Shown here: positions 38,671 to 64,000 of the stretch, piece by piece
How the letters are laid out: every line of letters begins with the position of its first letter
Numbering within the stretch: position 1 is the first letter of the stretch
Origin: Podarcis melisellensis
Taxonomy: Eukaryota
Direction: 5' to 3' (one strand)
DNA length: 64,000 bases
NCBI GenBank assembly: GCA_964234715.1
Contig: OZ174275.1
The notes under the pieces: model-generated
Databases searched by the model: none
Seen by the model: the letters and a program-made list of their open reading frames with translations, nothing else
What the model was told of the DNA's origin: nothing
Translations under genes and position numbers: made by a program

Positions 38671-38780
38671 ACCTATCTTTGGGAAATGACAAGTGGCGTA
38701 GAGGAGATACCCCCAGGGATTCTTAACAAAGAGCACATAATTTTTGGCAACATCCAGGAGATTTATGACTTTCATAATAA
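38671..38780 (+). CDS. KALRN: Kalirin coding exon (DH/GEF1)
   Basis: TCTAG acceptor; [36 protein letters not shown](N); AA|GTACGT donor; 110 nt, phase 0 to 2. Confidence 0.96.
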
Positions 38781-51668: not shown

Positions 51669-52698
51669 GTAATCTTAGTAATTCCTTGGAATAGCTATGA
51701 TTTTTAATCACTTGATGCTCTGCTTAAGGTAATTAGTTTGCTATGCAAAGGCTTTGTGAAGATTTGTCAATGAGGGAGTAATTGTATAAATAGTTGTTTC
51801 AGTGAATATCAGCAGCACAATAAACTTTGTCTACAGGGATCAGTTTCTCCCATAGCCATATTCTTGGATCCAGCAGAAATCAGGCATGGCTCTGTCTCTC
51901 AGCTGCCCAGCTGGTTCCTTGCTTCTAGTTCACACTCCTCAACTCTGGCCTTTGTCTTTCTAACTAACAATTATATATGGGAGCCCTCCCCCGACCCATT
52001 TTACCTCTAGCTTGGAGCCACTTCCTTTGTTACTTTAGCAACCCATACTTAGCCAGCCATTATCAAGAAACTTGCCTGGCTATTCCAGCAATTGAATCCT
52101 TGTTGGATTCAGGAATTAGAAGGGACTCAAGCATACAACCTGCCGCCTGCTACATACAAAGAAACCCCACAATAGTATGACTTACAGAGAGAACATTTGA
52201 ATGGAAAGGTATGAAATACTCCAAACTCTTGTAAAATGTGGAAAATATATAAAATGGAGGGGAAGGGTATCAGTACATTAATGTTTTGTACGTTTTTCCT
52301 TAAAGATTGTTATGATTTCTTAATTCAAACTACTTAAAAAATGCAAAGACTGAGAAATGACCCTTGGCAATTGGTGTCCGTTTTCCAAAACAGCAAAGCT
52401 ATAATCTAGATAGCTTGGTTTGGTTATGTGAGAAATCCAAGCAGAATGGGCTATGGGCAGGCCACCCTCATTACAGAGCTATTTTAAGAAACATTGCTGT
52501 CACCATATAAGCCCAGGATAGTCAATTTCCAAGAGCAAACATGGTTATTATGTGCTAGCTTCATGGTAGAGGTGACATCATTCTAAATTACAGATTGAGT
52601 TGTAACACAAATGTGACCGGCTGAGCAACTGACTTTTCACACACTAGCAGAGCAGTTTTCAAATCCATTGACGAAATTTTCTGGTTCTTTCCCTGCAG

Positions 52699-52801
52699 AG
52701 AGGGAGGAGAAGATGCTGACAGCCAAGGAGATGGGAGCAGTCAGCCAGACACAATTTCAATTGCATCCAGAACTTCTCAAAATACAGTGGACAGTGACAA
52801 G
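52699..52801 (+). CDS. KALRN: Kalirin coding exon (post-PH linker; last exon shared by Kal7 and longer isoforms)
   Basis: TGCAG acceptor; EGGEDADSQGDGSSQPDTISIASRTSQNTVDSDK; AAG|GTAGGA donor; 103 nt, phase 2 to 0. Confidence 0.97.
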
Positions 52802-53142
52802 GTAGGATTTGTTCTTGAAAATATAGCACTGCTGATTCTAGGTAGAAGAATCTGAAGTATTAAACTGTCGTCAGAGATAAAAATTAAGTGTTCTGTCTTT
52901 TTGGAACTGCTTAAACTGTCCGTTTACGTTCCATGGCTGCATAGAGTTCATATCAGGTCATGTCCAACTTTGTCCCTCAGCTGACAGAAGTCTCTTTGAT
53001 CCTGTGGAGGTTTCCATGAGTGGAAAGGGACAGGAGATGATTTTTGCAAATTTCCCTTGTGCCGCTTTCCATTCTATTCAAAAACATCCTCTGGAGCAGA
53101 TTTGAGGGGCACAGAAAATATTACCTCCTCCCTCAGGAGGTT

Positions 53143-53304
53143 GTACAGTCTCCCTCAGGAGGTTGTGGATTCTCCTTCCATGGAGGTTTTTAAGCAGAGG
53201 TTGGATGGCCATCTGTCATGGATGCTTTAGCTGAGATTCCTGCATTGCAGATGGTTGGAATAGATGACCTTTGGGTCCTTTCCAACTCAAAGATTCTATG
53301 ATTC
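53143..53304 (+). mobile_element. CR1 LINE 3' fragment
   Basis: Same CR1 3' consensus as 12632-12920, ending gattctatgattc. Confidence 0.9.
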
Positions 53305-54241
53305 AATGTTTCTGCCTTTCTACTCATAGAAGCTTCAATTGGATCAAATTGCCCTTCTCTCATTGAAGAGACACAATTGAATACAACTCATTCTTTGTGA
53401 GTGTGAGCATCCTGGAAAAGTAAAGCAGCCAGGCTGGATTCGCTCCATAAACTGGATCCAGGGTTATTTTTTCTTTCTTTCTTGGCACATTGGCATTGTG
53501 AATTGCACGTCATCCTTAAGTAGTTATCACCAATAATTTATGTGATGCAAATGTAAAAGAGCTGAGTTGCACTCAAATCTGTGGCACCATAACCATCTGT
53601 AATGGTAGGTGGAGGAGGAAGGATGGGCAAGGAGGCAAGGGCTGATTAGCAGGGCCAGCCTGATAGCATAAGCAACCTAAGTAGTCACTTGGGGAAGGAA
53701 TGTTTTTAAGGTTGTAAGTAGATTAGTGTGTGATTTGTGATTTGTAGCCCAGAAACTCTTTCAATATTCTGGTGGCCATCAGGGTACTACTTCTGGATTG
53801 AGGGAGGCTCTGCTTGCTTCCTCGAAATTTTAAGGCACACATTTCAGATTGTACAGCACAATTGCTTGGAGGCATAGACAGATGGGGAATGTGAGCTTGT
53901 TGGACCCTGGAAATTGGTGGTGTTAGAAGAGGCCCTGTCAGGAATTGATAAACCACATATGAAGAGGGCTGCCAGGTCCAGGAACTCAAACACACTTCAG
54001 CAAGAACAGCACAAGACTTTAGTGTGGTGTCCAAGGTGCAAAACCTGGTAAGGAGTCATTTTGTGGGGTTGAATAGTATCTATCTTTTCTCTCTTTGACA
54101 TAGTGGAATGCTTGAAGATGATTGGATTCTGTTTTCATTGAATGCATTGTTCAGATCTGGATATTCAGTTGCCATATTAATTTGATTGGGAACAGAAATG
54201 CATCTGCTTGGTATTGTTTCCTGATCTTTCAGCGGTGACAG

Positions 54242-54303
<62 letters not shown>
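54242..54303. repeat. (GATA)n microsatellite
   Basis: Seen directly. Confidence 0.95.
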
Positions 54304-54304
<1 letters not shown>

Positions 54305-54338
54305 GTCCCAAGGCACACAATTCAGAATGCAGACTTCT

Positions 54339-54480
54339 GATTCAGTGTATCTGAAGAAGTGTGCATGCACACGAAAGCTTATACCCAGAACAAACTTAGT
54401 TGGTCTCTAAGGTGCTACTGGACAATTTTTTTTATTTCATTTCGACTGCGTCAGACCAACACGGCTACCTACCTGAATCT
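54339..54480 (+). mobile_element. Penelope-like element terminal (pseudo-LTR) fragment
   Basis: Reptile PLE hallmark text: ctgaagaagtg...cacgaaagct...ttagttggtctctaaggtgctac...cagaccaacacggctacctacctgaatct. Confidence 0.8.
54341..54390 (+). ncRNA. Minimal type I hammerhead ribozyme motif (Penelope-associated)
   Basis: Stem I GTAT/ATAC (extendable TTC/GAA); core CTGAAGA 54351-54357; extra A; stem II GTGTG-CATG-CACAC 54359-54372; GAAA 54373-54376; palindromic AGCT helix III; predicted cleavage 3' of 54380. Confidence 0.8.
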
Positions 54481-54646
54481 AGAATCATGCAGAAGCAATT
54501 ACTGAGCTGTAGTTTGCTGATTGCTATTGAGTCTTGAAATAACACTGTTTGGTTCAGGTACAAAAGCAGTAAAGGTATAAAAAATTTCCTAAACTGCCTG
54601 AAGAGTATTGTCTGTGGTACATTTGGGACAATGTTATGGTACATGC

Positions 54647-54808
54647 CATAGAATTATAGAAGTGTAGAGTTGGAAGGGTCATTTAGTCCAAAACCCTGCA
54701 ATGCAGGAATCTGAACTAAACCATCGATGGCCATCCAACCTCTGCTTAGAAACCTTCAATGAAGGAGAGTCCACAACCACCTGAGGGAGTCTGTTCCATG
54801 GTCGAACA
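54647..54808 (-). mobile_element. CR1 LINE 3' fragment
   Basis: catagaat...gagttggaaggg...tgcaatgcaggaatct...tggccatccaacctctgctt, the reverse complement of the CR1 3' end. Confidence 0.9.
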
Positions 54809-55808
54809 TATGTCCTTTCCAGAAGCAGGGTAAATATCATAAGCAGCATTGTTGGCAGAGCAAACCTGTGAAACAGGAGTAAATCTTAAATGAATAACTT
54901 TTATAGGAGTCCTAAGATATACAAATTATGTTTGCATTAAAGGCATATTCTGGTGTTATTGGTTTAATTTCCTTCCAATAAAGTGGCAGTCATATGATCC
55001 TTCACAGATGTCTAAAAGGTCAGTAGGGCTGGGCAAATGCACTGTTCCAAACACATTGTTCAGAAGCAGCACAAAAGTTAGCTATGCTTCTTCCTTTTGT
55101 TTTCTTTTCTTAGGACCAATTTTGTATGTGGTTTGCTTAAGTGATTAGAGATCAAGCTCTAGTTTGTTATCATGGTTGTACACTTGCTTAACTTTCTTGG
55201 CAGTCTGAATCTCTGAATTTCAATTTTTTTTGTAAAGAATGACATATTACAATTAAGCACATAATCAAAGCCCTTGAGAAACCACAATAATCTTGCTCAC
55301 AATAAAAGTGACCTTAAAGCAAGGAACCAAGTCTGTTGGCAATACATTTTGAAGTCTGCAATATTTTGTCTGAAGGATCTTTTCCTTTTTTTCATTTCAA
55401 AATTTGGAAACTGTGGCAGAATTTAGACTGTACACCTTATCCTGACTATTGCAAACCCTAGCAGCTGGCAGCAGATCTACTCACTTATTGACCACTCTGG
55501 CCACCAACATCCCCATCCTCAAAGAAGATTATGCATTTTCTGAGAATTTAAGGCAAATTTCCCATGGCAACACATCTGCAGTGCCTCTCCAGCTGTTCCC
55601 ATCCCTGCAAAACTGAAGCAAAGGCCAATCATTCGGTGATTTCCTATTATGTGCATATGTCACACATTGCTTTCTCAGGGAGTGATGCAGGTTTTTTGAA
55701 ACATCCAAAGGCTGCATGTTGCAGGTGGAATAAATGATTTCTAACCGGTCACATTTATACTAAAACATACTCAGCCAATTTATATATCACTCACTGAAAA
55801 TATATATA

Positions 55809-55997
55809 CAGTGGTACCTCCGGTTGCGGACGGAATCTGTTCCAGAGGTCTGGCCAGATTCTGAGGTTTTCGCAACTGGAGAGACTGCTTCTGCGCACGT
55901 GCATGTGGCAAAAACCCGGAAATATACTTCTGGGTTTGCTGCTTACGTATCCTGAAGTTGACGTCACCGGAGGGATATGTAAGCGAATGTACGACTG
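55809..55997. mobile_element. Tc1/mariner (Tigger/pogo-type) MITE
   Basis: TA|CAGTGGTACCTC ... ATGTACGACTG|TA: imperfect TIRs with a TA target duplication. Confidence 0.8.
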
Positions 55998-56195
55998 TAT
56001 ATGTGTGTGTGTGTGTATTCCTGTAGGCTGTGAACAATAAGAAAAAATTATCCAGGCTGTATTAATGCCATCAGAAAAAGTGTCTGAACAGTTGGACACA
56101 TTAGGTTGATATGGTGGCAGAATTTACCTGTCTCTTGCCTTCCATTTGCCTGCTCTTCTACTGCCTGTGTTCATTTTGCTTGGCTCAATATGCAG

Positions 56196-56234
<39 letters not shown>
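56196..56234. repeat. (CTTA)n microsatellite
   Basis: Seen directly. Confidence 0.95.
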
Positions 56235-56941
56235 TGTGCCTTAGTTATGCAACTGCTAAAATTCATCAAGTCCCAGCTACCACAGTCAGGAGCCAGGGGC
56301 CCATGGGGCTCTCATCTGAAGTCCATGCTTATGTTATATTTTCATATTATATGGTATGGAGACTCCCTTCTGTTTGACTTGTATTTTGGTAACTTATTTC
56401 AAATTTTCTCCATGATGGGGAGGGGGCAGAATATGATTGTCACTTTGCCTTTTAGAGTTCTAGTCTGGCTTGTATTATTTTTGAGCATGTGTCTTCCTGC
56501 GATGCCACTGGGGAGCTGTAGCGGGAGGGTAGGCAAGCAGCTCTGTGTTGCTTGATGTCCTGTTTGGCTTGCATCATTGTGGATCCTGATTGGCTGCTGG
56601 AACATGGAGGAGGAAGCGTTGGCAGCTCCAGTGGCATTTAACTATTTTTTAAAGTTAAATGTTTCTTTTGTGAGCATGAAGTCTCCCTTTGACTATACAA
56701 CTCAGAATCCACTTATGATAACTTTCCCATATGGATTATCTGCAGAGGAATAGACAATGCCCTTTTTACCTTCAAATGTGCTGCTATCAAATATGCTGCC
56801 AAGAGTCTTTATGCTGTATTGATGTAGCTCCCTCTCCCCAAATAGAAAACTCTTTTTATTCTAGTGGTCATAACTGTTTCAAGTGTAAGAATCAAACAAC
56901 AACAGAACAAAAAGCTATGTGGTTAGTGTTTTGTATAAAGG

Positions 56942-57075
56942 CAGTGCTTTTTTTCAGGGGTTACTCAAGGGTACACGGTACCGGTACACCTCTCTTTTTT
57001 TGTTAAAAAATGTGGCACTTACTGTAACAGCTTCATGGTGCATACTGGCACCTGTTTTTCTAGAAACAAGCACTG
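56942..57075. mobile_element. hAT-type MITE
   Basis: TIR CAGTGCTT...AAGCACTG; 8-bp TSD TATAAAGG / TATACAGG (7 of 8 match). Confidence 0.8.
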
Positions 57076-58039
57076 TATACAGGAATCAAGTCTTATCTAT
57101 CAGATAGTAAAGAGAATGCCACTGTAGAGCAGGTGTACATTCCTGCAACATGTATCCTCAAATCTCTCCCCCCCCCAACACACATATGGAAGTGGAGCCA
57201 ATTCAGTAAGTGGGAATTATAAGAGCAGGCACAGGTTGAGATTCTGAATGCACACCCTCCCCACCCCTCCCTAGCAATAGAGAAAAAAAGACTGGACTAA
57301 ACCGCAATTCTCTGGCAGAAACAGCAGTTTCCCAGTAAGAGGTTAAAGCAATCAAGTTCTGAGAACTCTTCATTGACCTACCCCAATAAATGCTGACCAC
57401 ACAGGTACTAATGTGAGACATCCAGTTGTTATTAATTAGTAATTTCAAAAGGTTAGGGTGCGTGACTCACAACGAACAGTGAAAATTCATGTTATTTATT
57501 CATTTGTTTGTTGAAAATCTGATGCCCTGCACTTCCAATGCATTTGCATCACTCATGGTGGCAGATGGTTATCTACGCACAGCATTTTGTGGGTGGTGTC
57601 ACTGACGTCTCTTCTGGAGACTTCAATGCCTGAATTTGTGTGCGTATGTAATCAATGGTGACACATACATTATTGCTTTCTTTCCTGGATAATTTCCAAT
57701 ACTGCTGAGATTATTATTATTATTATTTTAAAGAGTTGTTCTGTCTTAGGTAGGACTCTGAAATAGGTAACTGCCTACATGGAATTGCTGTGGAAGAAAT
57801 AAACAATTCATCATGGAAATGGAAAGGTTGACAAAGGGCAGGAAATAGAGAGAATGGTGTCTGTTTCTTCCCACAGAGCTATTTCCCCTTCTAAGGTAGG
57901 GCAGCAAGATCACCAGATTGGTTCTTCAGATTAACTCAGTTACAGCACAAGAGACCCAGCCAGGGTGGGAGGAATGCCATAATGAGAACCCACAGCAAAA
58001 TGTTGCTTGGATTAAAAAGCTTAGTGCCCTATACAACAC

Positions 58040-58495
58040 CTCGCTCCTGATTCTCCCTTCCCTTCCCCTACCTGTCACCCTGTTTCTAACTTCCTCTTCT
58101 GCAATCCCTACTGTGTCTTTCATTTTATACTTCTCTCCTTTCTCCCCTTTGTGTTCCACTGTTTATGCTGCCATTTCCCCTCCCTCCACCTCTGCTCCTG
58201 TCCATTCTCTCTCACTTGATCACTCTGTTCTCCTCTGCCCCCAGCCCCACCCTCACCATCTCTTGTTCTTGGTCCTTTTCATCCTACCTTCTCCTTACTC
58301 CTCTTTGCTGCCTCTGCTCTCACCCAACTCCTCTGTTGCCTTCTCTCACTCACTATGTCATAAATTGTATTTCACTACCTCCTACCTCCTGCTTTCTCCT
58401 TATTGCCCCCTCCTCGCTGTCATCCTTTGGGTTTCTTCTTTTCTCCACTCAGTTTCTCCTTCTGCTTCTTGCTTCTGTTGTCCTTCTTCTGTCAG
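58040..58495. repeat. CT-rich low-complexity tract
   Basis: About 450 nt of strongly pyrimidine-biased sequence on the + strand. Confidence 0.8.
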
Positions 58496-61400
58496 GAGCC
58501 TGTGTGATGGTTTTTGAAAGCTTGCCATGCAAACCCTGACCCTACAGATTATGAGACAGCCAAAGAGCACAGCAAGATTAACATATACTGCATGCTTGTG
58601 CAGTTGCATTCAAAACCTTGGGGGGGGGGGGAGAAGTGCCCCATCTGTGTTTGTTTCTCAACCCCACCCCAATTTTTTGTGTTTCTATATTCCTCAAGAT
58701 TCACCAAGCATGCAGATATCTTTCTCTTGCTCTTTTGTCAACCCATCTTGGCTACAAAGCTTGTTGAGGCTGACCTCCCATCTCTCACACTTTGTTCTAC
58801 AGCATTATTGTGGTGCCCCCTGCAGCATGGTGCCCAGTGCAGGTATCTGATGTGGTGGAGCGGCAATCACCCACCCCCAATGTGCTAGGGACTTGTACTA
58901 TGTTTGGTCTCTGAAGCGTCACACCCATCCTGGGCTGTGGTGAAGTCACCGGGCATTGGCAGCCAATGGCTCCTGTCCACAGACTACCTTAGTGTTCATG
59001 TGCACAAAGCTGTTCAGAATTACTTGAGATATAAAATGAATGATTCGGCTTAGTAACTCATTGAGATTTTGGGGACTGTGGACTGTAGGAAATATTGTAA
59101 TAGGGTTCCCACCCCACCTCCCTTGCTTAAGGGACAAAAGTTGAGATTACAAATACTTAAAACTTTTTTGAAGGGGAATTTTCAGTGACAGTAACATCCC
59201 ATTTTATGTGTAGAACAAAATAACTGATCATTTAGAAGTTATTTAGCAATATGGGGGTAAATCTGTTTGAGTAGTTTGGACTCCCCCCCCCAAAAAAAAA
59301 GATATATCTATGATCCGGTTCAGCATCACTTGTTGAAATGAATCAAGTATTCCTCAGTTTCGTGAAGCATCCTGATATTTTGGTTTTGACTGATTTGTGG
59401 ATATCTGTAAGCCACAGGTTGGCAACTCAGTTCCAAATCATCAGAGTTCCTTTCTTCCTGTTTGTTTCCTCCTTGCTTTTCTCTCTCTTCGTGTAGTTTT
59501 AGAGCAATTGAAAGATAGTATTTTATTCGATAAAAATAACTTGATTTTTTAAATTTAAAGCTCCTGGTTGTTTGGCTTAGAGTAAATAAGTTTTTCCCTA
59601 GTCATCCACTTGGTAGACTTCTGTCCTGTGTGTTTGTAGCATACTAAAGTCAGAAGAGAAATACTTCCTCTTGTTTTCCAAAAAAAGGAGCATTGCACTT
59701 TAAGTGTCCTCTATGCACCTGTTTGAAAGTTACTCTATCAAACTAAATGAGGCTTACTTTTCAGTAAACCTGGATGAGATTGTGAATTCTAACATGAGAT
59801 GCACACTGTGAAAATTGAAGTAGGGTGGTCTCTTTCCATTTAGTTCATGAGAACACATAGAGTAATGATCCATAAGAAAATGGCTTAAATATACTTCAGA
59901 GCCTTAAACTATTAAGTTTTAGCAGCAGGAACTTATTGGCTTATAGTTGGGAAGGCGGTGACCAAGAAAGAACTTTGCCATTGCTATAGATTGTTCATCA
60001 TTTATAAAAGCAAACCGTCCAAAGCATGTGCTTGCAGTGTAAATTTTGATTACCCCATCTGCTTCTGAGCAGAGTTTAACCAGCAATTCCTATAATGCAA
60101 CAATTATGACTCCCCCCTCCCTTTCTGGGTCACCCACGTAAAGCTGTCCATGTGATTCCCCACCCCCATCCTTGGCAGGCTCTTGAATTGACTGTGATGC
60201 ATAAAGGGGTCGATCGACAAAGCGGTTGCCTGGGTGGAAAGACACATACACAAATGAATCAAGAGCACAAAGATTTCATGTTTGCTTCCCACACTCAAGA
60301 CTTTGAGAAATATTCATTTTTCTGTCGCCACCTTTGGGGTTCTGCACTGAAGGGGACAGGTAGGCGTTTTCAAATAGCAATAATTTGTGCTTCTATGGCC
60401 TTTTGCATCTGCACCCAGGGAGCACTGCATATGTGAATCACAAGCAGGCTTTTCTTTTTCCTCCCCTCCCCCTTTCTATCCTTTAAAATATCTGATCTAT
60501 GCCCGATAGTTGTGGAGGTGGGGAGGGAATAAGGAAGCATGCTGAGTCCTCTTCTTCTGCTACTACTATCTTTCATCCAGTACAATGTCATCATAAGGTC
60601 AAGAATGACAGCAAGAGGCTACCCTGCAGTAGGCTGCATGCTGACAGCGCCATGCAGAATCAATAGAGTAAGGGAGAGGCCAGGTGATGGAGAAGTTCAC
60701 TCAGCAGAAGCAGGGCTAGGGGCAAAAGGTGCTATGGCAGTGAAGAACAGATGGATGAGATATGGGGAAGCTGAATTGGATATTTAAATGTTACTTACCT
60801 TCTGTTCCACCTTCCAGCCTCAGCAATGCTCATATACTCTGTCCAACCGTTGACCAGTTTTTAGAGTCTGTATCTGACACTGGGAATTCAAGATATGATT
60901 AGCAACTAGTCTACTAGGAGTGGAGTTGCACTGCTGCCCCATCACATTCATTGGGCACGTTATTGGCCCTATAATGATCAAAAACCTATGATTTTATATT
61001 GCAAACTGCCCTGTGATCTTTGGATGATGAGCAGTAGAATGAATGAATGAATGAATGAATGTTGTGGATGCCTGAAATGAAGAAGCCTATGGCTGAGCAG
61101 CTGCTTGCATTCAGACTTCAACAAAATTTGTAAGACTTTTTAGGAAGGCTTGGTATAAAGAGTTAGTTATAATGTAAGAGATTGCATGGATTTGCCTGCC
61201 CCCGTGCCCCCAACACCTCTGAATTGATTTTCGAGAAAGGATTCATTCTGTTTGCACCTTAACGTCGTGACACGGTCTTCTTGTTACCATTGTCATGGCA
61301 CCCTCTTCTGCCAGACACTTGTGTTGGGTTTCAAATAATCTACTATCACCTGTCCCTGGCCACTAAATTAGACCAGGCTTTGAACATAGCTCCCATTGTG

Positions 61401-62666
61401 AAGTTATATTTAATGTACAAACCTTTGAAAGGGTTTTTGTAGAGCATGCAAATAGCCTAGTCATATTGGCTGACGATCTTGGAATGTATGTGTGCCTTTT
61501 ACAGGAGAATGCATCTTGGAACAATTTCAGAAATTGTGGGATACAGTACACCATATTCACACTTGGTTTAGTTTTTGCGTGCGTTTGATATTTTGTGTTA
61601 ATTTATAGGCAAGATTAATGTGTGGTGTGTGTGTAAATGGTAAAGGAATCCTATCTTTTCAAGATGCAGGAGCTGCTGAAAGTTCTTCAGGTCACTTCTA
61701 ACTCTGTGATTATGCATGGCTTTAATCAAATTAATAAGACATTTATGTTTGACTAGTACAAATCATATGGTGTGCATTATTAGTGCTCTTCCACATCATC
61801 CAAAAGAGACGTTTGAAAGGTTGCCAGAGGACATCCTTCCCAAACTTCTCAACACACCCACAATTTATTATAACCAGGTCAGTTTTAAAAGCAAAAACAA
61901 CTTTCATACTTAATGTTGAATTAGGAGATAAACAGTGTGTTTTGAGAATAGCTAACTCTTAATATAGAGACAGCAAAATCTGAATTTCTGTTTTGAATTT
62001 GGGACTGTAGTTTGACAAAGCACCCTTAGAAACACTGTTTTATGTAAGAGCTTCACACTGTAATCACCGAAAGATGCTCGAGACACAACTCTTATAGGCA
62101 TCTGGTTCATTCTGAGCAAAGCTCTCTTATTTATGATTTGCTGCTTCTCAACCACACAATTGATATACACCTTCATTCTTGTAACCTTCAGTTACAGTTT
62201 AGCATTGCATTTAAACACAACCATAGAATAGACTGAAGACAGCCAAACAGCTTTTTTAAAAGCATAATATTGAAATAGAGGAGTTGAATGTCCTTAGCCA
62301 GCTAATCAAATTGTCAGCCAATCACTGCCTTGTAGTTTAGGCAGTGTGAAAAAAATCATTTTACAATCAGTACCTTCATAAAATGTCTTTGTAGTGCAAA
62401 CACCATAGCTTTCAGCTAAACCTCATGTTAGTGAACTATTTGCTATTGCAGCTAATTGCTTATGCAATGTCTGTAAATCACAAGATGCTTCTGATGTACA
62501 TGTGATCTCGCTGTAGGCAGAATGGCTGAATCTTCCAAAGCATAAGGGAAGCCCAGTTACTGACATAAAAGTTGGCAGCCCATGCAAGTTGCAGAGGTGG
62601 TACAAAGTCTCTGTTCAGAATGACTGTGTGGTGCTAAATTGCAGGAAATAAACCATGTTGCAAACC

Positions 62667-62673
62667 TATAAAG
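62667..62673 (+). promoter_or_regulatory. Candidate TATA box of an internal promoter
   Basis: TATAAAG about 120 nt upstream of the ATG at 62790, followed by a GA-rich putative 5' UTR. Confidence 0.45.
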
Positions 62674-62789
62674 CTTCACTGGAAAGTCAGACAGGCAAGG
62701 GGAGGGGAAGAGAGAGAGAGAGAGACAGACAGAAACATTTTCAGTTTTGCCTTCAACCGCAAAGAGGCTGCAGCCAACAAAGGAGCAGA

Positions 62790-62837
62790 ATGTTAAAGTG
62801 GATGAGTTCGAGGCAACCAAAACAGATCAAGAAGAGA
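62790..62837 (+). CDS. KALRN: Candidate alternative first coding exon of an N-terminally truncated kalirin isoform
   Basis: ATG with A at -3; MLKWMSSRQPKQIKKR; strong donor AGA|GTGAGT in phase 0, the same phase as the preceding exon end; upstream TATA box. Confidence 0.65.
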
Positions 62838-64000
62838 GTGAGTATGACCTGAACCCCTCCTTTTCCTCTTACATCACATTAGGTCAAGGGGATAATAATA
62901 GTATAATCATGATCAGCTAGTAAAATGAACTATTCAAACCCAAGTCTGTAAAGGTACAAAACTGTGTTCCGATTCAATTTCTAATTAGGAGAAAGAGTGT
63001 TCTCCCCTTTTGAAGAAGCCAGATTTTATTTTGCTATTTGAATTAACAATTTAGGATGTAAATGTGTTGTAAGAATTTGTAGAGTGTGTAAATATGGTGG
63101 GCAATCATTTGTGTAAATGCAGAAAAACAGCTCCATGTTATAGGGACATGGTCACTAACATAGTTACCAATCAGTCAAGATTTCTAGCAAATGGGTGAAT
63201 AACTTGAAAAGATCAGAATAGACTTGTGGCAGAATAAACTTGCAAGCATTTTAAGTAGGTGTAAAGTTGAAATGGAAAGTGTAAATACTGTGATGTTATG
63301 TTTTGTCAGCTTATTAGAGGCTACCTAAGTGTTTAAGCGAGGACCTAAAAAAATAATTATCCATTTCTCTAGAATAAGCAGCTCCAGTCCACATATTCCT
63401 TTTTAATATACTTATTTGCCGTCAAAGAGAGTATCAAGGAAGTGCTTCCTCAGACCACCCATAAAAGGGAATAATGGGTGTGGTGAAATGTTGCGGACAT
63501 TCCCTCTTTGCTGCTGAGCAAACTGCCCTGCTGGGGTTATTTGCAGTCCAGCCTGTCTTTCATAAATGGGAGCACTTGTGGAAAGTTAACTAAAGGAGGA
63601 ACAGTGTATGATCATGCAGTTAAAGGTTTCTTTTTTATTTTTTGTACTTTTTTATTTTCAACACTCTTGTTGTTTTAAGTGCCCATTTAATATATGTCTG
63701 TCATGCTGTCCCTAAACATTGGTGACATGGAAATGCGTACATTGTACTGATATCAATGACACTTATCTAATGGTTTGAGAGTAGGGGAAAACATAGCTAA
63801 TGTTGATTCCCAGCTAGCTCTGTCCATTTCAAACTAGCTATGTGCATATGCCTGTTTTGGGTGAGGTTCATATTTACACTGGCATTTTACAAGCCAAACC
63901 CTGATAACAGTAGTGCATGCACATGAACAACCTGGCCCAAGGTTCCTATTTACTAGAAGCTAGTGTGTGTACCCTTTTCCCCTCAACAGCTCCACGCTGA

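What the first reader, a model, noticed from the sequence alone, without database searches (positions are those of the whole stretch)
62300..62843. Hidden internal promoter and coding first exon for a GEF1-less kalirin isoform
Seen: CCAAT near 62318, TATAAAG at 62667, a GA-rich leader, AGAATG at 62790, 16 codons (MLKWMSSRQPKQIKKR) and a consensus donor AGA|GTGAGT in phase 0, about 10 kb into the intron after the ...SDK exon. Knowledge: downstream KALRN exons encode SH3, the RhoA-specific GEF2 and a kinase, and internal promoters (Duet) exist. I recall a similar mammalian predicted N-terminus (MLKWISWRQ...) but cannot verify it. Inference: a transcript encoding SH3-GEF2(-kinase) behind a short basic, amphipathic leader. 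If spliced to the Kal7 terminal exon it would instead give a PDZ-binding micropeptide. Alternatively TTTTCAG|62745 would make a 93-nt in-frame cassette exon.
Basis: partly seen in the sequence, partly recalled or inferred. Interest (0 to 1): 0.7.

Follow-up and report, generated by a model that had tools for sequence, protein, structure and literature searches.

The report
Internal first exon of kalirin gene
A short exon about 10 kb inside a kalirin (KALRN) intron is transcribed and spliced in frame onto the SH3-domain exon, giving a kalirin message without the first exchange-factor half; internal starts of this kind are already known for this gene, and human annotation has one at the same relative position.

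Summary
On their own they are not beyond chance: 3 of 24 consensus donors on this strand end an ATG frame of 16 or more codons.

Assembled contigs from two independent studies of one organism settle the main point. They run colinear with the genome from 62558 or 62634 to 62837. They leave it exactly at the GT donor and continue with letters that read LSGGCELTVV, the start of kalirin's SH3 exon, in frame with MLKWMSSRQPKQIKKR. They do not splice at 62745 and carry no upstream exon, so this is an alternative first exon, not a cassette.

- The transcripts include the TATAAAG at 62667, so the predicted start at 62695-62700 is not supported.
- Three more ATGs lie upstream. ATG 62655 is in frame in this genome, but the contigs are 2 nt shorter in the GA repeat, which turns it into an overlapping upstream frame.
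- The leader is basic but not amphipathic.
- GEF2 and kinase content lies outside the window and was not seen.

The exon is not canonical Duet, which starts after the SH3 exon. It sits where human annotation places a start site (ENST00000393496). Deep conservation could not be tested. The finding is real but ordinary.

The parts
62558..62837 (+). Alternative first exon of KALRN, minimum extent seen in RNA-derived contigs
   Evidence: table 8. X1 record 8 (553 nt, depth 19.7) lies on 62558-62837 and X5 record 16 (838 nt, depth 90.2) on 62634-62837. Both records end at their upstream edge, with no loose end before it. Both leave the genome at 62837. No other contig covers this stretch, so it is unique sequence and not a dispersed repeat.
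62790..62837 (+). 16-codon frame MLKWMSSRQPKQIKKR, ending in phase 0; ATG context AGCAGAATGT (A at -3)
   Evidence: The frame stays open across the observed junction into LSGGCELTVV.
62838..62843 (+). Splice donor GTGAGT, shown to be used
   Evidence: table 7. In X1 and X5 (two studies) one contig each has loose letters behind 62837. The same 30-letter consensus appears in both, with agreement 1.
62655..62657 (+). Upstream ATG, in frame with 62790 in this genome (would give a 61-residue leader); out of frame in the 2-nt-shorter transcripts of organism A
   Evidence: The record spans are 278 letters against 280 on the window (X1) and 202 against 204 (X5).
62582..62637 (+). Two short upstream reading frames (ATG 62582, 13 codons; ATG 62620, 5 codons) inside the transcribed leader
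   Evidence: 62582 is covered only by the X1 contig and 62620 also only by X1; the X5 contig starts at 62634.
62694..62740 (+). GA-rich microsatellite in the leader, probably length-polymorphic (2 nt shorter in organism A)
   Evidence: TRF 62709-62733, AG x 12.5; read laying skipped 62694-62740 as a repeat, each contig has 2 gap letters, and no gap is listed elsewhere in table 4.
62667..62673 (+). TATAAAG; lies inside the observed transcripts, so its promoter role is not shown
62318..62322 (+). CCAAT, about 240 nt upstream of the most upstream contig end; function untested
52699..52801 (+). Preceding constitutive KALRN exon (...GDGSSQPDTISIASRTSQNTVDSDK), ends in phase 0; 'exon 33' in the human and rodent numbering
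   Evidence: The human exon-33 primer in PMC11630257 Table S1 encodes SQPDTIS.

Best explanation
This is an alternative first exon of KALRN, driven by an internal promoter in the intron after the last GEF1-region exon (...DSDK). Shown: transcription begins at or upstream of 62558-62634. The exon ends at 62837 and is spliced in phase 0 to the exon that begins LSGGCELTVV, the first SH3 domain. Inferred: the message lacks Sec14, the spectrin repeats and GEF1. It would encode a kalirin that starts with a short, strongly basic leader (+6) followed by SH3-1 and whatever 3' exons are used (a Kal8-, Kal9- or Kal12-type end). The likely start codon is 62790, the only ATG of the exon's two long frames that is in frame in both allelic forms seen. 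The long leader carries two short upstream frames. Depending on the length of a GA microsatellite, it also carries either an in-frame 45-codon extension (this genome) or a 65-codon overlapping upstream frame (organism A). Translation from long-leader transcripts is therefore probably inefficient and may depend on start-site choice. The exon is not canonical Duet and is most likely the counterpart of the annotated human start site ENST00000393496.
For:: in two runs from two studies, contigs of 553 and 838 nt match 62558-62837 and 62634-62837 with one other letter (A>G at 62777). Both break exactly at the GT donor and carry the same 30 following letters, which translate in frame to LSGGCELTVV. 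Depth is 0 in all neighbouring intron bins of those runs, so this is not unspliced RNA or genomic DNA. Neither contig carries sequence of an upstream exon; five runs hold 0.39-0.43 of the sampled words of 62640-62900, about the share expected if only the exon part is present; the window holds the KALRN GEF1 exons upstream; the human order is exon 33 (chr3:124,496,351), an annotated TSS (124,504,879; 8.5 kb later), the KALRN-7 end (124,518,593), then the SH3 exon (124,563,035). This matches a first exon 9.8 kb after exon 33 here; internal promoters giving GEF1-less kalirin are established.
Against: Contigs cannot show a true 5' end or the strand. The runs are only guessed to be RNA, although a spliced contig can hardly come from DNA. 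One real RNA-seq run of the same species label (X23, 1.9 Gb read) had no read on the exon, so expression is tissue-restricted or low there. Up to three upstream ATGs precede 62790 in the observed leaders, which argues against efficient use of that start. No protein relative was found. Conservation of the 16 codons outside close relatives was not testable. The 3' content of the message (GEF2, kinase) was not seen. That LSGGCELTVV opens the SH3 exon rests on my knowledge of kalirin, not on a tool result.
Confidence: 0.8

Rival explanations
1. The exon is a real first exon but only a non-coding leader. The 16 codons are incidental. Translation starts at a later Met in the SH3, linker or GEF2 exons, or the message is mostly silenced by its upstream frames.
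For:: ATGs at 62582, 62620 and 62655 precede 62790. In the 2-nt-shorter form seen in both contigs, the 62655 frame overlaps and passes the 62790 ATG. ATG frames of this length before a consensus donor are common by chance; no protein with this N-terminus was found in the reachable length range. A frame-changing microsatellite sits inside the would-be extended coding region.
Against: The 62790 frame is open across the junction and joins the SH3 exon in the correct kalirin frame. The phase-0 end matches the phase-0 end of exon 33 that normally feeds that exon. The ATG has A at -3.
Confidence: 0.28
2. It is a 93-nt in-frame cassette exon (acceptor TTTTCAG|62745) included between exon 33 and the SH3 exon.
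For: The frame is open from 62745 and 93 is a multiple of 3.
Against:: both contigs run colinear with the genome through 62745 for 110-190 more bases. No loose end or joint is reported at 62745. Contigs drop rare variants, so a minor form is not excluded.
Confidence: 0.03
3. It is an artefact: a chance ORF in an intron, with contigs that are chimeric, from unspliced RNA or from genomic DNA.
For: The runs are labelled 'RNA? (a guess)'. The motif set is not beyond chance.
Against: Two studies give the same break, exactly before GT, with identical following letters in the correct kalirin frame. The surrounding intron has zero depth.
Confidence: 0.02
4. The exon also splices to the Kal7 terminal exon and yields a 36-residue peptide that ends in a PDZ ligand.
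For: Both exons would be in phase 0 (inference from known KALRN structure). In human, the equivalent start site lies upstream of the Kal7 exon.
Against: The only junction seen goes to the SH3 exon. No Kal7-type end (STYV) is encoded in 52802-64000, so this cannot be examined in the window.
Confidence: 0.05

Closest known systems
Annotated human KALRN start site 'ENST00000393496_5 TSS' (PMC11630257, Table S2)
   Same: It lies in the same interval: about 8.5 kb after exon 33, before the KALRN-7 terminal exon and the SH3 exon. Here the exon lies 9.8 kb after exon 33, no Kal7 exon lies before it, and it splices to the SH3 exon.
   Different: Only the position was compared. The sequence, encoded peptide and 3' structure of the human transcript were not available, and no human letters were sent to any tool.
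Duet / Kal Duet9 / Kal Duet12 (canonical internal KALRN promoter)
   Same: It is an internal promoter giving kalirin without Sec14, the spectrin repeats or GEF1. Expression is tissue-restricted, in muscle, pituitary and cortex.
   Different: [quoted passage not shown] The mouse Duet reverse primer encodes ...RGPSLG..., a different first exon. The exon here lies before the SH3 exon and includes SH3-1 in the product.
Delta-kalirin promoter (intron before exon 11/12)
   Same: It is another internal KALRN promoter that trims N-terminal domains.
   Different: Delta isoforms keep spectrin repeats 5-9 and GEF1.
C. elegans UNC-73 RhoGEF-2-only isoforms
   Same: They are internally initiated Trio/kalirin-family isoforms with only the second GEF half, cited as resembling Kal Duet9.
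   Different: The lineage is distant and the exons are unrelated. This is a functional analogy only.
Kalirin exon-1C N-terminus (promoter-specific leader that alters localisation and phosphoinositide binding)
   Same: It is a promoter-specific short N-terminal peptide that could tune localisation (cites Miller et al. 2015).
   Different: That leader precedes Sec14 on full-length kalirin. The leader here is basic but shows no amphipathic periodicity, and its function is untested.

Membership tests
Internal-promoter, GEF1-less KALRN isoform (Duet-like in the broad sense) | The transcript begins inside the gene, downstream of the GEF1 exons, with no upstream exon attached | tested here: met
   the contigs end at 62558 and 62634 with no loose letters before them, and the intron upstream has zero depth. 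Caveat: contigs cannot fix the true 5' end.
Internal-promoter, GEF1-less KALRN isoform (Duet-like in the broad sense) | Spliced in frame to downstream kalirin coding exons | tested here: met
   62837 joins letters reading LSGGCELTVV in the frame of ATG 62790. The phase matches exon 33.
Internal-promoter, GEF1-less KALRN isoform (Duet-like in the broad sense) | The product contains GEF2 (DH2-PH2), with or without the kinase | not testable with these tools
   The downstream exons lie beyond the window. Read laying shows only 30 loose letters. The contigs carry 275 and 636 nt beyond the junction but their content is not shown. A Kal8-type SH3-only end is not excluded.
Canonical Duet first exon | The first exon lies in the intron after the SH3 exon, so the product starts just before GEF2 without SH3-1 | tested here: not met
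   The exon here splices into the SH3 exon. [quoted passage not shown]
Orthologue of human ENST00000393496 first exon | Same position relative to exon 33, the Kal7 exon and the SH3 exon | tested here: met
   8.5 kb after exon 33 in human and 9.8 kb here; upstream of the SH3 exon in both. No Kal7-type exon lies between exon 33 and this exon.
Orthologue of human ENST00000393496 first exon | Sequence similarity of the exon or the encoded N-terminus | not tested
   No vertebrate genome or isoform collection is reachable for a 16-residue peptide. One search was blank (the length window excludes full isoforms). One search found no paper.
   both contigs contain the TATAAAG and extend 33 and 109 nt upstream of it. 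A minor downstream start is not excluded, because the one raw-read run had no reads here.
Cassette exon | Use of the acceptor at 62744|62745 | tested here: not met
   the contigs are colinear through 62745, with no joint or loose end there.

The most novel reading that the evidence does not exclude
The exon encodes an SH3-first kalirin whose N-terminus is switched by a GA-microsatellite length polymorphism in the leader. One allele gives a 61-residue extended N-terminus from ATG 62655. An allele 2 nt shorter turns the same ATG into a 65-codon upstream frame that overlaps and suppresses the MLKW start. Repeat length would then tune the dose or form of a GEF1-less (possibly SH3-only, Kal8-type) kalirin between individuals or closely related species.
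Probability: 0.1. Interest if true: 0.45.

Novelty: new member of a known kind. Interest (0 to 1): 0.25.

Why it matters
Kalirin isoforms differ sharply in function: GEF1 acts on Rac/RhoG and GEF2 on RhoA. Most antibodies and knock-outs target the N-terminal half, so internally initiated isoforms escape them. Confirming that a non-mammalian amniote uses a start site between exon 33 and the SH3 exon, where human annotation also has one, suggests this little-studied SH3-containing, GEF1-less form is old and not annotation noise. It also gives a concrete exon to target. Beyond that it is an ordinary alternative first exon. The upstream-frame and microsatellite detail is the only unexpected element.

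Tried and rejected
- **Word search.** The stop-free 61-residue translation (window:62655-62837) gave one candidate and nothing at E<=10. The tool only sees proteins of 34-107 residues for this query, so it says nothing about full isoforms.
- **Paper search.** MLKWIS, MLKWMS, MLKWI and ENST00000393496 matched no main text.
- **Big protein search, atlas, structure prediction.** Not run. A 16-residue match cannot pass HMMER's filters against 1.8 billion proteins, cluster representatives would rarely carry this N-terminus, and the low-complexity RE-rich part would fill the hit list.
- **Raw-read run X23.** It had no read on the exon or intron, so strand and 5' ends could not be read.
- **Organism B (X6).** It holds 62592-62693 with 0/102 changes, against about 2.5% in two intron pieces. 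Its depth (2.9) equals that of its intron pieces, so it may be DNA or pre-mRNA. The difference is not significant (P about 0.08) and is not used as conservation evidence.
- **Cassette reading and TATA-positioned start.** Both rejected.
- **'Amphipathic' leader.** Rejected.
- **Transposon-derived promoter.** Unlikely: only one contig per run lies on the exon, whereas the true repeat at 60992-61027 attracts dozens.
- **Rfam.** No RNA family in 52000-64000.
- **Joined models.** The only joined step was a local translation of the exon plus the 30 letters printed by read laying.
- The human primer letters read in the paper were not sent to any tool.

Full report
**What is in the sequence**

The window is part of KALRN. 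Its + strand carries the GEF1 exons: DH1 from about 37.8 kb and PH1 to about 51.7 kb. One DH1 exon (38671-38778) is 36/36 identical to PDB chains named Kalirin and scores lower against TRIO. A PH1 exon matches TRIO's DH1-PH1 structures at about 85%.

The exon that ends ...SQPDTISIASRTSQNTVDSDK occupies 52699-52801 and ends in phase 0. It corresponds to 'exon 33' of the human numbering, whose published primer encodes SQPDTIS.

- CCAAT at 62318
- TATAAAG at 62667
- a GA-rich run, with TRF calling 62709-62733
- the ATG at 62790
- 16 codons MLKWMSSRQPKQIKKR
- AGA|GTGAGT with the GT at 62838

**Is it more than chance?**

Not as sequence alone. The + strand has 24 GTRAGT sites. Three of them end an ATG-initiated frame of at least 16 codons in phase 0, and one of those is a real DH exon. 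The - strand has 5 of 38. The region is not a CpG island (observed/expected 0.15).

**RNA evidence**

The look-up of sequencing runs found five small runs of 'organism A' from two studies. They hold 0.39-0.43 of the sampled words of 62640-62900, about the share expected if only the exon part is present.

Read laying on 60001-64000 gave these results:
- One contig per run lies on 62558-62837 (X1: 553 nt, depth 19.7) and on 62634-62837 (X5: 838 nt, depth 90.2).
- Each contig ends at its upstream edge, with no extra letters there.
- Each leaves the genome exactly at 62837.
- Both carry the same following 30 letters. In the frame of ATG 62790 these read LSGGCELTVV.

From my knowledge of kalirin, LSGGCELTVV is the start of the first SH3 exon, the exon that follows ...DSDK in Kalirin-9 and -12.

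Neighbouring intron bins have zero depth in both runs. The contigs are therefore spliced cDNA, not DNA or pre-mRNA. The donor is used, in frame, in two independent studies.

**First exon or cassette?**

Both contigs run straight through the proposed acceptor at 62745 for 110-190 more bases. No joint or loose end is reported there. No good acceptor precedes 62558, because the sequence upstream is purine-rich. The exon therefore behaves as a first exon of at least 280 nt.

- *TATA-driven start.* The TATAAAG at 62667 lies inside both contigs. A TATA-driven start at 62695-62700 is not what these runs show. Contigs cannot fix a 5' end, and the one raw-read RNA run (X23) had no reads here. The true start sites remain open, but they reach at least to 62558.
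- *Upstream ATGs.* The leader carries ATGs at 62582 (13 codons), 62620 (5 codons) and 62655. In this genome 62655 is in frame with 62790, so the first long frame would give a 61-residue leader rather than 16.
- *Length difference in the GA repeat.* Both contigs are 2 letters shorter than the window over their aligned span (278 against 280; 202 against 204). No gap is listed outside the skipped GA repeat 62694-62740. A 2-nt loss there puts 62655 out of frame. It then opens a 65-codon frame that overlaps the MLKW ATG and stops 17 nt into the next exon (simulated).
- *Which start codon.* ATG 62790, with the in-frame Met 4 codons later, is the only start common to both forms. Long-leader transcripts should translate it poorly.
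- *'Amphipathic' leader.* The 16-mer is strongly basic (+6). Its helical hydrophobic moment equals the shuffle mean and it holds a proline at position 10, so 'amphipathic' is not supported.

**What it most likely does**

Shown: an internal first exon is spliced in frame to the SH3 exon.

Inferred: the product lacks Sec14, the spectrin repeats and GEF1. It begins with a short basic leader followed by SH3-1.

Not seen: the 3' part of the message. The contigs extend 275 and 636 nt past the junction, but their letters are not shown and the exons lie outside the window. The product could be SH3-GEF2 (Kal9-type), SH3-GEF2-kinase (Kal12-type) or a small SH3-only protein (Kal8-type end).

Other notes of this scan place a candidate Kal9-type 3' end and the SH3-Ig linker 80-86 kb beyond the window. 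I did not check them.

**Comparison with what is known**

Internal KALRN promoters are established. The Delta promoter and the Duet promoter give N-terminally trimmed isoforms, and Duet is expressed in muscle, pituitary and cortex.

Canonical Duet is a different exon:
- Its human start (chr3:124,584,857) lies after the SH3 exon (124,563,035).
- The mouse Duet primers encode an unrelated peptide.

The same human study lists, among its forward primers, an annotated start 'ENST00000393496_5 TSS' at chr3:124,504,879. That is 8.5 kb after exon 33 and before both the KALRN-7 terminal exon (124,518,593) and the SH3 exon. The exon here lies 9.8 kb after exon 33, no Kal7-type exon lies before it, and it splices to the SH3 exon. 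By position it is the counterpart of that annotated human start.

I could not compare sequences. No vertebrate collection is reachable for a 16-residue peptide, the word search was blank, and no paper holds the peptide.

**Verdict**

The cassette alternative is rejected. The promoter anatomy and the 'amphipathic' label are not supported. Coding use of the 16 codons is plausible but unproven, and it is complicated by the upstream ATGs.

The exon is a further member of a known kind, the internal KALRN promoters, and is probably already annotated. Interest is low to moderate.

The only joined step was the local translation, which used the 30 letters printed by read laying.

Noticed in passing
window 60992-61027 (next to (GAAT)6 at 61037-61061): A 36-nt segment is held by dozens of unrelated contigs at summed depths of 280-660 in all four runs, including another species and the raw RNA-seq run. 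Each contig diverges on both sides. This looks like the conserved end of a dispersed, expressed repeat (a LINE or SINE tail with a microsatellite), not part of KALRN.
   Followed up: partly
window 54341-54390: Another first-stage note (s1-489357) calls this an intact hammerhead ribozyme core. An Rfam scan of 52000-64000 at gathering thresholds found no family at all, hammerheads included.
   Followed up: partly
window 62777: A>G in the leader in both organism-A contigs. Together with the 2-nt GA-repeat difference, this means the RNA runs come from a different individual, strain or close relative of the assembled genome.
   Followed up: no
window 63968-64000: A pyrimidine-rich tract followed by CAG (ccttttcccctcaacag|ctccacgctga) sits at the very end of the window and looks like a splice acceptor. 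No RNA contig lay there, and it does not encode the Kal7 tail.
   Followed up: no
window 54080-54370 and 56106-56555: Short tandem arrays appear in the intron, read as (SIYL)n and (LTYL)n in ORF translations. They are ordinary microsatellites.
   Followed up: no
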